64,000 bases of DNA from NCBI GenBank assembly GCA_964304625.1, contig OZ199839.1:5388898-5452897 (forward strand), written 5' to 3'. A program made the translations under genes and the position numbers. The notes under the pieces are model-generated. The model did not search any database. It was not told the origin of the DNA and saw only the letters and a program-made list of their open reading frames with translations. Positions 37,391 through 45,699 of this stretch are shown piece by piece (positions within the stretch are counted from its first letter, which is position 1; every line of letters starts with the position of its first letter). The DNA comes from Kudoa neothunni. Lineage: Eukaryota; Animalia; Cnidaria.

Positions 37391-37845
37391 AGACTTATTC
37401 AACACGAGCTGATGACTCGCGCTTACGAGGAATTCCTCTTTCGTGAGCAATTATTACAAGGCTCAGTCCAAAGCAAGACAGCGATTTTCAAGATTACCCA
37501 CCCCTCTCAGGGCAGGAGCTTGTTGTCACTATCATTGTAGCACACGTGCAGCCCAGAACATCGAAGGGCATCACAGACCTGTTATTGCCACGCTTCCCCC
37601 GGCTTCACTCCGGTGGTCTCTTTAAGATCGGTCAAGACAATTTAACCGTAATCAATTAAAGATCGTGGTCTCGCTCGTTACCGGAATAAACCTGACAGAT
37701 CACTCCACCAACTAAGAACGGCCATGCACCACCAATCATCAAATCATGAAAGATCTCTCAGTCTGTCAATCCTACCAATGTCTGGACCTGGTGAGTTTCC
37801 CCGTGTTGAATCAAATTAAGCCGCAGGCTCCACTCCTGGTGGTGC
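37222..37845 (-). rRNA. 18S (SSU) rRNA gene, 3' ~620 nt only; interrupted at 37845
   Basis: tgatccttccgcaggttcacctac, gacgggcggtgtgtacaaagggcag, gggcatcacagacctgttattgc, ccgcaggctccactcctggtggtgc; the 5' portion is absent from the window. Confidence 0.97.
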
Positions 37846-38618
37846 GCATCTCCGATAGGTAGGTCACTGAAAATAAAGTGACAAGAAAAAGAAACATTAC
37901 AAGGTATCTCTGTTATCGTTAGTTTTATAACATATAATTCTGTTAAAAAACTAATTTTCATTAACGCAACTTTATTATTAAAGTTATTAACGCTACAATC
38001 TTGAGCTCTTTTAGTGCTGTTATTTCAACTAACTTAAACGAGTTAAAATTTAACACATTAATTACTGTTAGTTTTAATACACTTTCTAGTTTCTAACGAC
38101 GCCTTTAAATCTTAAATATTTTATCTAGTTTTTCATAAATTAACGTATTATTGTTTAATAGGTATTAACGTTTCTATGCCATTCTAACTTAAACGTTATA
38201 TATCGTTAGAAAGTTAAAACTGTATTATTTTTGTTCATCTATAACACTTGCTATAATTAATTGTTTTTAATAGTTTTTCTGAAGAAAACTTTTTGACACA
38301 ATTCATCGGTTAATCTCGGTGCCTACGATTATTGTTTAAATCATTAATTTAAGGCGATTTTAGCACTTTGAAAGCACATACTTGCTTAAATAAATTAATA
38401 AATCTTAACTATTAACATGTTTTGTAGTAGCTCTTGATATATAAAATTAACTTTCATTGTTGTCCTTTACCAAATAAGCCAATTAAACATCACGGACTAG
38501 CTCCCAGTAAAGTTATTAGTCCGATCTCTTTTAATTTTAACGTTACTGTAAATTTAACTTATCTAAAACTCTTAATAAATTTTATTTAAATTATCTTCCC
38601 TTCTGTTACTTCAAAACA

Positions 38619-38963
38619 ATGGAACACCCATCTAAACTTAACAATAATCAACTTAAATTCTCCACAGATAAGTATTACGACTGTCTTGTGACTGAATTAC
38701 CTCACTTTAACAAAAAATTTAAACTTGATCTAGAATTAAAAACCGCTTTCATTCATTTACCGAAGAATAACTTCACTTGCCATATATGCAGTATTATTAT
38801 TAACACCTACAAAGGATTAAAAAAGCATCTCTCACAAAAACATAATTGTAATAGAGTTAAAATGATCTGCCAAGTATGCAAATCCTTCAAAACTAACCAA
38901 ACAAACTATCTCTATGAACACCTTAAAAATTCACATCCCGGTTTTATATCTAATAACAGATAA
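38619..38963 (+). pseudogene. N-terminal fragment of the retrotransposon ORF with two C2H2 zinc fingers
   Basis: FTCHICSIIINTYKGLKKHLSQKH and CQVCKSFKTNQTNYLYEHLKNSH. Confidence 0.8.
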
Positions 38964-41598: not shown

Positions 41599-42132
41599 TG
41601 TTGGGGCTGGAAGATAATTCTGCGACACCAAGGATATGATGTCCTACGATATCTTGGTCGGCACCTATATGAAATAATATACAGTTAGCGCTAACTATAT
41701 AAACCGCTTGATATTAGTCTCTTGAGGTTGTTGTATGTTTGAAGTGATAGTTTCTTGCCTTAACATAGGCTCAGTGGCACATTTGGACTCATTTGATGGA
41801 ATTGATGTGGAACCTTGGTTAGAAATATTTGATTTTCTCCTACTCCATAGAAATATTCCAGAGGAAAGACATACGTTAGAATTACTGGTCTCGTTGTCTT
41901 CGAAAATGTTCACCATCGTTCAGTAAACTGGTTTAGAGTTGGATTCACCTTACGCTTCTGTAAAATCATTCCTTAAGGCAAGATTTGGAAAGGTGAAGGA
42001 CTCGTATGTTGTGCAACGGGAGTTTTCCATCTGTTCTCAGGAGTATGGAAAAACCCTTGTAGAAATGGAAGAGGAAATCCGAAGAGGAAGAGCTGCATAT
42101 TTTTCCATCGGATCTGAACTCCTCGATCAAAT
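41599..42132 (+). mobile_element. Gypsy 5' LTR (41599-41765) plus gag fragment, related to the 17628 element
   Basis: VSCLNIGSV...WLEIFDFLLLHRNIPEERHTLELLVSLS is homologous to the Gag at 17782. Confidence 0.88.
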
Positions 42133-44670
42133 AAACAATCTTTTTGCGAAAAATCCAAAACTGTCGTTTGAAAGTATCTGTGGTAGGAAATTACCTAAGA
42201 CCAATATTCCTTTTAATGAGATAATTTCCTTCTGTAAAAATCTCTGGAACGATTCAAAAATATTTAAACTTCCTAATCTTGACATCTTTTACCATAAATA
42301 CAATTGGCCTGTGAATCATTTTACAAATAAAGAGATATGGAACCGATTTAATAAAATTAATCCACATGCTGCCAATGGTCCAGCTGATATTTCTTTTTCA
42401 TCATGGAAATGATTTGCCTCAGAATTTGGTATGAACCATCTAAGAAACCTTAATGATTTATTGATAGACGTATGTCCGATTACCTTAAGTTAACAAAAAA
42501 AATCTTTCTACTTAAAGATCCCAATGGAGATATAAATAATCCATCAAAATATCGTCCAATTTCTTTAACAAATTCATTGTATAAATTATTTACTGGTCTC
42601 TTAGCTGGCCGTCTTCACGAAATTATTGGAAAATTTATTCACCCTGTACAAAAAGGTTTCCTTCAACAAGACGGAATTTTCCAACATCTTACCATTTTAA
42701 TGAATTGTATTCCAAAAGTAAATCTAAAAAAAATTGTAAACTGAACTTTTCCTTTATTGACTTTGCAAAAGCCTTTGATAATGTTCATCTGAATTATCTT
42801 TAACTAAAATTAAAGAATGTTTAAGCCCCTCGATTGCTAACCATTATGGCCCAATTTTCACAAATGCAAAAACGATTATTTATGACGAAGAACAATCTGC
42901 ATATATAATATCATTAATGATATAAGACGATGATATTTATCTCCTTTGCTCTTTATTATAGGTATAGACCAACACCTCTGGAATCTAGATTCCACCACTA
43001 ATGGTATCTCATAACTTCCACAACCACCAAATATTAAAAAACCTAGATTAAATATCTCTTGCCTATGCCGATGATTTCATCATAATTAAAAACTCTATTA
43101 CCAACATACAATCAACTATTCATTGTGTTGAAAAATGGCTTAAAGACAGTAACAGCCGAATCAACCAAAACAAATGTTTCTTTCCCATAAATTCCAAACA
43201 TCCTTCAGACCTCAAATATGGTAATTACAATATTCCAGCTTAAAATCAAAACGATAGCTATAAATACCTAGGAATAAAATTCCGCATCTCTAACTCTGGA
43301 TTTGAATCGTTCATGTCCTTATTTAATAATGAAATAACCTCCCTCTCTAAGCCTATCCTTCGATGCCCTAATCTGCACCATTCAATTAAAATAGGACTTC
43401 TTAAAATGTTTATTTTCTCCAAGTATAACCACCTCATTCGACTACATCGACTTCCTCCTCTCAATTTACATGATATAGACATCCTCTTTAGAGACCTCAT
43501 CAGATCTCTAAACCTTGCATCCATCACCAATGTCCACTTCTTCCAGTTTTTCCTCATATAGTGACCTTTGCATTCTCAATCTTCACTTCAAATCTATCCT
43601 TACCACTTTAACAACATCCTAAATGTCCTCAGCAAATGCGAACATTTCCTATTCCTCTTCGATGTTTTTCTGAAGAACCTCGCTAAATCTAGAATGGTTT
43701 CTATCCCCCACAATGCTTCCAACTCTGACATTGTTTCCCTGCTAAACTCTCCACGAACCAGCCCATTCCACAGATATTACAATCATTAATTTGCATTCAT
43801 TAACAAACACAATAGCTTCTTCCTTTCCAACTCAGGATTTATTTCCCCCAATTGTTCTGATGTTAACCCCAAATATTCTCGTCAAACTCAATCAACCAAG
43901 TCATTTCAAACATACACCTAAAGAACTGGAAAGACATTAAAATCCAATCCATTAACATCCCTCTTTCTCCAGTTAAATCAATTTCCTCTCTGTCACACTC
44001 TTCCAAACTTTCCGATCCCTGTTTTTCCTGGTGGATCACAGCCACCCTCAACCTTTATACTCTAAGATGCTCTCCACTCTCCCAGCACATCTCTCCTCTC
44101 TCTAAAATTGATGTAGAAGATGTCACTCCCAAAACGAAACCCTTGGTCATATCCTCAATAATTGTCCCTTTACCCTTTCTCTACAAAAAAACACTACGAC
44201 ATGACCTTGTCCTTAATTATATAATCAAAAAATCAAATCTTGCAAACTCCAATTTCATCATTGATAAAAACTATTCATCAACAAAATTAAGACCGGATCT
44301 AATAATTCTAAATAAAGATCCCAACTTACCAGACATACTTATCGATGTCTCAATTCCCAACCTCTTCTCCAACCCCTCACAAGCATTAACCGAATCCTAC
44401 AACTATAATATTCAAAAATACTCCCACCTTATTGACATCCACCATTCAATCCACAATAAAAACCCCATTATCCAATTCATCCCTTCATCATTGACTCTCT
44501 TGGGAACCATCATCCTAACAACTCACAAATTCTTCGTATCCTTAACATACCACCATCCAAACCAATCTTAGCCACTATTTCCCAAATAACCATCAAAGGC
44601 TCAATGAATATATACAACCAATTTATATTCTCAAACTCATCAACGCCATCAAATCCATCCTCCAACTAAT
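42133..44670 (+). pseudogene. RT, CCHC knuckle and restriction-like endonuclease of the 18S-inserted element
   Basis: ANGPAD, PSKYRPISL..LYKLF, QKGF, IDFAKAFDNV, LSPLLF, LAYADD (~43060-43075), YKYLG; CRRCHSQNETLGHILNNC from 44112; RHD...RPDLII...IDVSI...KY. Confidence 0.92.
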
Positions 44671-45699
44671 GTCAACATCCACTTCTCATCCCTCGTACCA
44701 TTCAAACTCCAATTCTCCATCCATCCTACAAAGTAAATATTTTTTATATTTTAACTTATATTTAGGTAAATACTCTCCTCTACCAAGTAATCCCGCTATC
44801 AAGAGCGAGGCCCTGGTGGGCTACAGATATAAACTTTAGTTTAGCTTAGTTTATATTTTGTCATTCTCCGTCAATTTCTTTAAATTTAGCCTTCCGTTGT
44901 GCATTCGCTCAGAAAAGAACAAATATTTTCATTTTTTAATCTAAATTGGAGTAAACCGGGATAATAATCCGAAATCGGATCGCCTTCAGGCATGCAGTTA
45001 TTATTTACGAATTGTCAAAGTAAGCATCAACTCTCCAAGAAAAAATTCACGTCTAACTTTTATTGCCTCTACACTTCTCCATAGTCGTCAATCCCCAATT
45101 TTCCAACGTCATTTTGGAAGCCAGTACGGTTCAATTGTCTCTGTCTAAAGTTCCAGGCCATGTGATTACATTACATACTCCTTAACTACCCACCAAGTGT
45201 CATGCAATAATTCCTAGATGGTGTTAAAATTTGTAGAGTATTTTCAATCTGTCGGAAACAGTAGATTCTAAGGCTACGTTCAGTATTCGCCTACTCTTCG
45301 TCGATTGTCGAGGGCATTCGAAAAAGATCGAATGATTATTTTTATGCAAAAATACTCACACTTAAAGCTATCAAAATCATTTAAGTTTTTCATTATGGTT
45401 ATTCTCGATTTTACTCTGAATATATCAAAAATTCCACCAATCGTGAGATTTTTGCTTGTTTTATACATATGTGTATGGTAAGAATATGTACATGACGGTT
45501 GGGAAGGACACAAACGATGCGAACCTATTCAGGTAAATCGTTTGCAATAAAAGATTTTATATTAAAATAGGACAATATTTGTAATTCCGAGGGTTTCTTA
45601 GTGGATAATTTTTATCTCGAATGATGCCATCATCCAAATATGACCTATGAAACTTTGAAACAACATTTGAATATGTATATATATATATATATATCAACA

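What the first reader, a model, noticed from the sequence alone, without database searches (positions are those of the whole stretch)
37800..44900. Site-specific non-LTR retrotransposon inserted antisense into a highly conserved 18S rDNA site
Seen: 18S stops exactly at ...GACGGAAGG|GCACCACC (rRNA sense), and the expected next bases (ccttccgt on +) reappear at 44890-44897. Between them lie two C2H2 fingers, an RT, a CRRC..ETLGHILNNC knuckle and an RHD/PD..D restriction-like endonuclease, all on the strand opposite the rRNA. Known: R2 inserts sense in 28S and is co-transcribed. R7 (R1 clade, mosquito) and R8 (R2 clade, Hydra) target 18S, while R5 (planarian) and R9 (rotifer) insert antisense in 28S. 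Inference: an antisense, 18S-targeting RLE element with NeSL/Utopia-like RT motifs (PSKYRPI, QKGF..DG..QH) may be a new rDNA-specific family needing its own promoter. Human 18S carries the same target motif, which is relevant to R2-style gene-insertion tools.
Basis: partly seen in the sequence, partly recalled or inferred. Interest (0 to 1): 0.92.

Follow-up and report, generated by a model that had tools for sequence, protein, structure and literature searches.

The report
Dead retrotransposon antisense in 18S gene
A long-dead, single-copy jumping gene of the NeSL/R2 type lies backwards in a universally conserved spot of a stranded, truncated 18S rRNA gene. Broken relatives from one other organism end at the same 18S spot, so it probably belongs to an undescribed 18S-homing family, but no working copy was found.

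Summary
The observation largely holds. On the minus strand lie 28S, 5.8S and only the 3' third of 18S. The 18S stops at 37845/37846, exactly before ...GCACCACC in rRNA sense.

On the plus strand follows a non-LTR retrotransposon (37846-44863) with two C2H2 fingers, a reverse transcriptase, a CCHC knuckle and a restriction-like endonuclease (RLE). It is dead: at least 14 stops or frameshifts, and 2.4 kb of two later transposon insertions. It is single-copy in the 40-Mb assembly.

That remnant continues 18S from the break. The remaining 5' 1.1 kb of 18S is absent here and everywhere in the assembly.

Four broken relatives from one sequencing run of another organism end next to the same 18S stretch in the same register (p <= 0.0004 each). 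This supports site-specific homing.

The C-terminal domain resembles a Caenorhabditis NeSL-like protein and no solved R2 protein, and no Myb domain was found. It is therefore probably a NeSL-clade family, not R8.

Unresolved: all flanks are diverged and share changes, so the 18S-like stretch may travel with the element. The scan had noted this stretch and its tail before (s1-695900, s1-696057). Interest is moderate.

The parts
27220..32162 (-). Probable intergenic spacer of the rDNA unit. It is AT-rich and has about 440-bp subrepeats at 28.8-31.0 kb.
   Evidence: Unique in the assembly from about 27220 onward. Hits recur with a period of 440. GC is 26-27%.
32163..35795 (-). 28S rRNA gene, full length, uninterrupted
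   Evidence: Rfam RF02543, model 1-3401, 2893 bits
36353..36506 (-). 5.8S rRNA gene
   Evidence: Rfam RF00002, 130 bits
37230..37845 (-). 3' third of 18S rRNA (model positions about 1158-1823). It ends flush with the element.
   Evidence: Rfam RF01960. An nhmmer profile of 46 18S genes aligns up to 37845. 5 of 177 universally invariant positions are changed.
37846..38618 (+). 5' untranslated region of the element (773 nt, AT-rich)
   Evidence: Read directly. Single copy in the assembly.
38619..39738 (+). N-terminal coding part. It holds the start codon, two C2H2 zinc fingers (38772-38843, 38865-38936) and a low-complexity linker broken by stops and frameshifts. No Myb domain was detected.
39739..41602 (.). 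Nested later insertion: decayed IS1595/ISXO2-like DNA transposon
   Evidence: Copies at 84-89% identity elsewhere in the assembly. Weak Pfam PF12762 hit.
41599..42134 (.). Nested fragment of a second repeat family, many copies at about 75-80% identity, with a gag-like reading frame
42134..43560 (+). Reverse transcriptase, read in three frames with stops
   Evidence: Pfam RVT_1 on two pieces. tblastn with relatives' RT gives 28-37% identity. Motif positions.
43565..44111 (+). Linker between RT and endonuclease, frameshifted
44112..44666 (+). CCHC knuckle (44112-44165), restriction-like endonuclease (RHD 44197, RPD 44290, D 44344, K.Y 44416) and C-terminal end. The stop codon is at 44667.
   Evidence: Alignment A1 shows invariant R-H, D, D, K-Y. 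39-47% identity to P0001. Coordinates.
44670..44863 (+). 3' untranslated region. It has a GC-rich motif followed by an AT-rich stretch, an arrangement shared with the relatives.
   Evidence: No consensus fold was found.
44864..44897 (-). Diverged remnant of 18S that continues the gene from the break. The significant alignment covers 44867-44897, matching 27 of 31 aligned columns; unrelated sequence follows.

Best explanation
Window 37846-44863 is one dead copy of a site-specific non-LTR retrotransposon of the RLE type. It has about 4.6 kb of its own sequence, split by 2.4 kb of two later transposon insertions. Its architecture is two N-terminal C2H2 fingers, reverse transcriptase, CCHC knuckle and a PD-(D/E)xK endonuclease, nearest to the NeSL clade. 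It lies antisense in an 18S gene between ...GACGGAAGG and GCACCACC....

Most likely mechanism (inferred from how R2-group elements work, not shown here): the endonuclease nicked the rRNA-sense strand at this conserved site. The freed 3' end then primed reverse transcription of the element's RNA from its 3' UTR (target-primed reverse transcription). Because the element faces against Pol I transcription, it could not ride the rRNA precursor and must have had its own promoter in the 773-nt 5' UTR.

The host unit is a solitary rDNA unit: spacer, 28S, 5.8S and the 3' third of 18S. After the insertion it lost the 5' 1.1 kb of 18S, leaving a 31-34-nt remnant, and then decayed together with the element.

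The family homes to this 18S site, because four relatives from another organism end at the same 18S stretch.
For: - The flanks are adjacent in 18S. The left flank ends at ...GGTGGTGC (37845). The right flank resumes 3 nt into the expected CCTTCCGTCAATT.. and matches 27 of 31 columns.
- Domain content and the catalytic residues are conserved even in the decayed copy.
- The rRNA genes are on the minus strand and the ORF on the plus strand.
- The copy is dead: at least 15 stop-free pieces, and nested repeats whose other copies are 75-89% identical.
- It is single-copy. The element's DNA, its RLE protein piece and the more intact relative P0001 each find only this place for this family.
- The rDNA unit is solitary. 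No other rDNA matches this unit, Rfam finds no other 18S, and a reference 5' 18S finds nothing in the 40.3-Mb assembly.
- The relatives P0001, P0002, P0007 and P0009 lie on four contigs of one run (SRR31175926). They are 28-47% identical in protein. Each is followed within 2-8 nt of the same 18S position by antisense 18S-like sequence, shuffle p <= 0.0004.
- Decay of the rDNA (5 of 177 invariant 18S positions changed) is of the same order as the element's decay.
- The target 29-mer is universal: at least 106 eukaryotic metagenome contigs carry it exactly.
Against: - No copy, here or in the relatives, is seen in an intact 18S.
- Recognisable 18S ends after 31-50 nt in all five copies.
- The flanks share departures from the universal 18S letters, and three relatives share further ones. 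This is odd for independently decayed target DNA.
- Only the window copy shows a 5' junction.
- The relatives come from a single run of unknown origin.
- The assembly at the two junctions is not checked by reads. My one reads call used runs that held no read of this region.
- The promoter and the mechanism are inferred.
Confidence: 0.6

Rival explanations
1. The 18S-like stretch belongs to the element. An ancestor sitting in 18S read through into its flank, and that 3'-transduced tail (about 50-100 nt) has since been copied with the element, perhaps serving as built-in homology for priming. The family need not still be strictly 18S-specific. The window locus would then join a copy in 18S to non-rDNA through recombination or deletion.
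For: - All five tails share non-canonical letters: ATTTC in 5 of 5, AAATTT in 4 of 5, CGT in 5 of 5.
- L017, L027 and L029 share more (CAGTT), following the grouping of the elements.
- The relatives' ORF pieces are longer than the window's (up to 349 aa), yet their tails are less like 18S (about 70% against 87%).
- The tails of the relatives stay alike for 75-107 nt, and L027 departs after about 75 nt, just beyond an AATAAA.
- Nothing after any tail is 18S.
- Other RLE elements of this genome do carry part of their tRNA target.
Against: - In the window the 5' flank is true 18S, exactly complementary to the tail's start. This is what a plain insertion gives.
- The window's flank beyond 44897 is unlike the relatives' tails (p > 0.13).
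- C-to-T and G-to-A changes can recur independently in AT-rich genomes.
- The hosts' real 18S is unknown, and nematode-type 18S has AAAGAAATTG here (from memory).
Confidence: 0.22
2. Assembly artefact: a mis-join at a collapsed rDNA array puts a partial rDNA unit next to an unrelated decayed element.
For: This is the only rDNA in the assembly and it is partial. rDNA arrays are commonly collapsed. There was no read support, because laid no reads.
Against: - A chance mis-join would not leave the two flanks adjacent in 18S.
- It would not reproduce the 3' junction seen in four independent contigs of another organism.
- Runs X1-X4 hold 46-100% of the words of the element's 3' half.
Confidence: 0.07
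3. Chance insertion of a non-specific RLE element into an rDNA pseudogene, with no homing.
For: There is one copy in this genome, in a transposon-rich region.
Against: All four relatives with a visible 3' flank share the 18S-like flank in register.
Confidence: 0.04
4. It is a member of R8 or another R2-lineage-A offshoot that targets 18S.
For: The relatives' RT scores best, among solved structures, against lineage-A R2 proteins (E 4e-29, against 6e-17 for R2Bm). R8 is the known 18S-specific RLE family (PMC5035012).
Against: - The CCHC-RLE domain finds no R2 protein in the PDB at E <= 10, but finds a Caenorhabditis RLE protein at 60 bits.
- No Myb domain was detected, and there are two fingers rather than three.
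- The RT is slightly closer to this genome's other RLE elements (115 bits).
Confidence: 0.07

Closest known systems
R5 / LIN elements of planarians (NeSL clade; targets 28S rRNA, tRNA-Arg, tRNA-Glu; PMC4640811)
   Same: RLE-type non-LTR retrotransposons with N-terminal zinc fingers and a C-terminal CCHC plus RLE. They home to rRNA or tRNA genes, and their target choice diversifies within one lineage. This genome likewise holds tRNA-associated RLE elements.
   Different: The target here is 18S, not 28S. The relationship is inferred from domain architecture and one NeSL-like hit, not from a tree.
NeSL-1 of Caenorhabditis
   Same: Apart from two of the family's own SRR31175926 proteins, the only credible hit among 1.84 billion representatives is a C. 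remanei RLE protein. It scores E 8e-4 with the window piece and 60 bits with P0001. It shares the CxxC..H....C knuckle, RHD, PD, D and K.Y.
   Different: NeSL-1 targets spliced-leader genes and carries an N-terminal Ulp1-like protease (PMC4640811). No such domain was detected here. That P0006 is NeSL-1 is my inference from the host genome.
R8 of Hydra (R2 lineage A; 18S rDNA; Kojima et al. 2006, cited in PMC5035012)
   Same: An RLE retrotransposon specific for a highly conserved 18S site.
   Different: R8 sits inside R2 lineage A. Here the RLE domain shows no detectable similarity to solved R2 proteins, no Myb domain was found, and the element is antisense to the rRNA. The exact R8 site and its orientation could not be read.
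R2 (28S rDNA)
   Same: One ORF with fingers, RT, CCHC and RLE. Target-primed reverse transcription is the presumed mechanism. The RT is 92-105 bits to lineage-A R2 proteins.
   Different: Different gene and site, opposite orientation (so no co-transcription with rRNA), and no Myb domain.
R7 of Anopheles (R1 clade; 18S rDNA)
   Same: The target is in 18S.
   Different: R7 has an AP-type endonuclease, two ORFs and a poly(A) tail (PMC7265360). It is a different superfamily.
Utopia (U2 snRNA genes)
   Same: NeSL clade; one to three N-terminal fingers without a Myb domain (PMC4640811, PMC13188248).
   Different: The target is U2, or weakly specific. No U2 lies at these junctions.

Membership tests
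RLE-type non-LTR retrotransposon (R2 group in the wide sense: CRE, R2, R4, NeSL, HERO) | Reverse transcriptase of the non-LTR type | tested here: met
   Pfam RVT_1 on window pieces, 26 and 32 bits, the first below and the second above the 29.6-bit cut-off. The relative's RT scores 99 bits. The best PDB matches are R2 and LINE-1 proteins.
RLE-type non-LTR retrotransposon (R2 group in the wide sense: CRE, R2, R4, NeSL, HERO) | C-terminal CCHC knuckle followed by a PD-(D/E)xK restriction-like endonuclease | tested here: met
   CRRC..H....C at 44112-44165. R-H, D, D and K-Y are invariant in the alignment with five relatives.
RLE-type non-LTR retrotransposon (R2 group in the wide sense: CRE, R2, R4, NeSL, HERO) | Single ORF, no LTRs, defined 3' end at a specific target | tested here: inconclusive
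   The layout fits one ORF and the 3' junction is shared by five copies. However, the ORF is broken and the true 3' end is ambiguous (tail question).
NeSL clade (NeSL-1, R5/LIN, Utopia) | RT phylogeny groups with NeSL-1, R5 and Utopia | not testable with these tools
   No reference sequences of the named families could be fetched. The RT is 115 bits to this genome's tRNA-associated RLE element and 105 bits to lineage-A R2, which does not decide the question.
NeSL clade (NeSL-1, R5/LIN, Utopia) | One to three N-terminal C2H2 fingers and no Myb domain | tested here: met
   Two fingers. No Myb hit at E <= 1 on any N-terminal piece. The region is decayed and interrupted, so the absence is soft.
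NeSL clade (NeSL-1, R5/LIN, Utopia) | C-terminal domain closest to NeSL-type proteins | tested here: met
   A C. remanei RLE protein is the only credible hit beyond two of the family's own SRR31175926 proteins among 1.84 billion representatives. It scores 60 bits to P0001, against no PDB R2 hit.
R2 proper, including R8 and R9 | Myb domain after the fingers (the hallmark used in PMC13188248) | tested here: not met
   No Myb domain detected. Caveat: decay and the nested insertion at 39739.
R2 proper, including R8 and R9 | Insertion at the canonical 28S site (R2), or the published 18S site in R2 lineage A (R8) | tested here: inconclusive
   Not in 28S: the 28S here is uninterrupted. The element is in 18S, but the published R8 site could not be read.
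R2 proper, including R8 and R9 | Sense orientation, allowing co-transcription with the rRNA precursor | tested here: not met
   The ORF is on the plus strand and the rRNA genes on the minus strand.
Site-specific (homing) retrotransposon | Independent copies at the same target position | tested here: inconclusive
   Five copies share the 3' junction with an 18S-like stretch. Only one shows the 5' junction, none lies in an intact 18S, and the stretch may be element-borne.

The most novel reading that the evidence does not exclude
A NeSL-clade lineage that homes, antisense, to a universally conserved 18S site and carries at its own 3' end a 50-100-nt copy of the target just beyond the nick. That would be a built-in homology arm that lets a self-transcribed (not rRNA co-transcribed) element prime reverse transcription on its target. 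It would be the rRNA counterpart of the target-carrying tRNA-associated RLE elements in the same genome.
Probability: 0.18. Interest if true: 0.7.

Novelty: new member of a known kind. Interest (0 to 1): 0.45.

Why it matters
Target-specific RLE retrotransposons are the source of the R2-based gene-insertion tools, and very few lineages are known to have left the 28S site. In the papers I could read, R8 is the only RLE family described for 18S, and the listed NeSL-clade targets (spliced leader, tRNA, 28S, U2, TG repeats) do not include 18S.

A NeSL-like family homing to a site that is identical from protists to humans, in the orientation that forbids co-transcription, would add a second, independent invention of 18S homing. 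It would also be a natural case of a self-promoted rDNA element.

What is in hand, however, is fossils only: one dead copy here and broken pieces in one other data set. The practical value therefore depends on finding living relatives.

Tried and rejected
- Reads: my single read-laying run went to three DNA runs and one RNA run that only share the species label (X5, X7, X8, X10). None laid a single read on 42000-46000. This is no test of copy number, junctions or expression; runs X1-X4, which hold the stretch, should have been used.
- More relatives: the zinc-finger piece found nothing. The relative's RT found only 26-30%-identical metagenomic RTs. The search for related loci found none in genome or viral contigs.
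- Long decayed 18S to the right of the element: not supported by Rfam on the flanks, by an nhmmer 18S profile or by a purine/pyrimidine alignment against shuffles. The right flank is also unlike the spacer on the left.
- Target-site duplication: the 'catctccg / cattctccg' repeat at the two ends is not significant, since 24% of random pairs from the element score as well.
- Conserved 3' UTR fold: none. A lone fold gave z = -2.7, which is not persuasive.
- Alternative genetic code as the cause of the stops: rejected, because frameshifts are needed as well and all three stop codons occur.
- Other copies of the tail in the assembly: none at up to 3 mismatches.
- Exact R8/R7 sites: the papers are not held, and searches gave nothing.
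- Host identity: not established. The Atlas look-up was uninformative.

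
Full report
WHAT IS THERE

Rfam places 28S (32163-35795), 5.8S (36353-36506) and only the 3' third of 18S (model positions 1158-1823) on the minus strand. A profile built from 46 eukaryotic 18S genes aligns up to 37845, where the universal ccactcctggtggtgc ends. 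Rfam's end at 37851 includes six poorly matching bases.

To the left of 28S lie about 4.9 kb of AT-rich sequence that is unique in the assembly and has 440-bp subrepeats, a typical intergenic spacer. Further left are Gypsy and BEL/Pao elements, and to the right a piggyBac element.

The window is G000:C2:5388898-5452897 of a 40.3-Mb, four-contig assembly of an animal. This is the only rDNA in it. The rDNA unit's own DNA, Rfam's SSU model and a reference 5' 18S each find nothing else.

THE ELEMENT

The element lies on the plus strand, from 37846:
- a 773-nt 5' UTR;
- a start codon at 38619;
- two C2H2 fingers (38772-38843, 38865-38936);
- a low-complexity linker;
- after an interruption, RT motifs (PSKYRPI 42541, QKGF 42649, FIDFAKAFD 42753, YADD 43064, YKYLG 43259);
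- the knuckle CRRCHSQNETLGHILNNC (44112-44165);
- the endonuclease residues RHD, RPD, D and K.Y (44194-44427);
- a stop codon at 44667 and a 3' UTR of about 195 nt.

The reading path needs at least 15 stop-free pieces in three frames, so there are at least 14 disabling lesions. Positions 39739-41602 are a decayed IS1595-like DNA transposon whose other copies are 84-89% identical. Positions 41599-42134 are a fragment of another repeat.

The element's own parts are single-copy in the assembly, by DNA and by protein. It is a fossil.

THE RIGHT JUNCTION

However, from 44867 the sequence reads TCCGTCAATTtCTTTAAaTTT-AGCCTTcCG. That is the antisense 18S continuing three bases after the break and matching 27 of 31 columns. 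None of 5000 shuffles reaches its score, and nhmmer gives E 0.04. The 8-mer is the diverged AGCCTTGCGA inside that stretch.

The two flanks are thus adjacent in 18S, so this is a real insertion into an 18S sequence. Beyond 44897 no 18S is detectable. About 370 bp of unique sequence and then other repeats follow. The 5' 1.1 kb of the gene has been lost.

AGE

Five of 177 positions that are invariant in 46 reference 18S genes are changed in the left flank. This is comparable to the more divergent references and compatible with a few per cent of neutral decay. That is the order needed for the 14 or more lesions in about 3.5 kb of coding sequence (my estimate).

The remnant's four differences in 31 columns are somewhat more than that. 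On so few bases the excess is not decisive.

RELATIVES

The RLE piece was scored against 1.84 billion representative proteins. It gave only three credible hits: P0001 (50% identity), P0002, and a 428-aa protein of Caenorhabditis remanei. A profile search added P0007-P0009.

All five close relatives lie on short contigs of one run, SRR31175926. They are also broken into pieces and are absent from G000.

In the four contigs that reach past the 3' UTR, the next bases align to the same antisense 18S stretch. The alignments start within 2-8 nt of the same position and extend to about 50 nt, with shuffle p <= 0.0004 each. This is the main support for homing to this site.

WHAT DOES NOT FIT

- In no copy does 18S continue beyond 31-50 nt.
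- All five stretches share departures from the universal letters, and three relatives share further ones that follow the elements' own grouping.
- The relatives' flanks stay alike for 75-107 nt, whereas the window's flank after 44897 is unlike them.

Three readings remain open:
- the hosts' own 18S differs there;
- every copy sits in old rDNA debris;
- the stretch is a 3'-transduced piece of target that now travels with the element.

It also echoes what I saw in this genome's other RLE elements. In L026 a complete tRNA-Gln gene precedes a 1775-aa ORF, units repeat every 5595 bp, and the 3' half of the tRNA lies at each unit junction.

I give the plain-insertion reading 0.6 and the carried-tail reading about 0.2.

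FAMILY

The C-terminal domain of the family scores 60 bits against the C. remanei protein. NeSL-1 is the RLE family described from Caenorhabditis (PMC3636483), but that P0006 is NeSL-1 is my inference. The domain finds no R2 protein among solved structures, even at E 10.

No Myb domain, the hallmark used to separate R2 from Utopia-like elements (PMC13188248), was detected. There are two fingers.

The RT alone does not decide. It scores 115 bits to this genome's tRNA-associated element and 105 bits to lineage-A R2 proteins. A proper tree against R2, R8, R9, R4, NeSL, Utopia, R5 and HERO could not be built, because no reference sequences could be fetched.

The known NeSL-clade targets listed by Kojima and Jurka are spliced leader, tRNA-Pro/Arg/Glu, (TG)n, 28S and U2, not 18S (PMC4640811). 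The known 18S families are R8 (R2 lineage A, Hydra) and R7 (R1 clade) (PMC5035012, PMC7265360).

MECHANISM

Shown: the anatomy, the orientation, the junctions and the conservation of the catalytic residues.

Inferred from R2-group biology: a nick of the rRNA-sense strand at the site, priming of cDNA on the 3' UTR, and, because of the antisense orientation, transcription from the element's own promoter.

The loss of the 5' part of 18S may date from the insertion itself (failed second-strand joining) or from later deletion or recombination. Nothing here tells which.

LIMITS

- The host species of both data sets is unknown.
- The exact R8 site could not be read.
Broken parts were searched piece by piece, by reference.

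VERDICT

This is a real and correctly spotted feature. It is most likely a fossil of an undescribed NeSL-like, 18S-homing, antisense RLE family, that is, a new member of a known kind. Interest is moderate, and would rise if living copies or an element-borne target arm are shown.

Noticed in passing
L026 (G000:C2:7568000-7577999), also G000:C2:7573221-7605168 and C2:1007435-1034224: Arrays of RLE retrotransposons with intact ORFs of 1775-2243 aa. In L026 a complete tRNA-Gln (382-455) precedes the ORF (515-5839), units repeat every 5595 bp, and the 3' half of the tRNA plus a T-run lies at each unit junction (about 6004-6060). The element seems to carry part of its target. These elements are 22-30% identical to the 18S family in the RLE domain.
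   Followed up: partly
L025 (G000:C2:7311500-7319500): Another RLE element on the minus strand, with its ORF broken into pieces of 353, 1061, 484 and 286 aa. A tRNA-Ile gene (7471-7544, minus) lies just upstream of it.
   Followed up: partly
window 39739-41602: Decayed IS1595/ISXO2-like DNA transposon nested in the element. At least four other partial copies lie elsewhere in the assembly at 84-89% identity.
   Followed up: partly
window 18286-26440 and 48391-52223: Gypsy (RT, RNase H, integrase) and BEL/Pao (Peptidase_A17, DUF1758/1759) retrotransposons with long ORFs, and a piggyBac transposase of 594 aa. The rDNA fragment sits in a transposon-rich region.
   Followed up: partly
window 28784-31000: Tandem subrepeats of about 440 bp in the presumed rDNA intergenic spacer.
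   Followed up: no
whole assembly G000: No complete rDNA unit and no 5' part of 18S anywhere in the 40.3-Mb, four-contig assembly. The working rDNA array is missing from it or collapsed.
   Followed up: partly
window 37230-37845: The retained 18S part has changes at universally invariant positions (5 of 177), for example TTTGATTCAACACGGG where eukaryotes have TTTGACTCAACACGGG. This rDNA unit looks like a slightly decayed pseudogene.
   Followed up: partly
runs X5, X7, X8 (DNA) and X10 (RNA): Three large whole-genome runs and one RNA run filed under the same species label laid no read at 90% likeness on 4 kb of this region, although about 1.9 billion letters (1.7 billion for the RNA run) of each were read. 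The label may cover a host or a deeply diverged lineage.
   Followed up: no
L016, L017, L029 (3' ends): Beyond the 18S-like stretch the SRR31175926 flanks share an A-rich run, with AATAAA in L017 and L029 (also in L027), and a conserved motif ..GCGCATACCGTGATTGGCTAGTAC.. of unknown origin.
   Followed up: no
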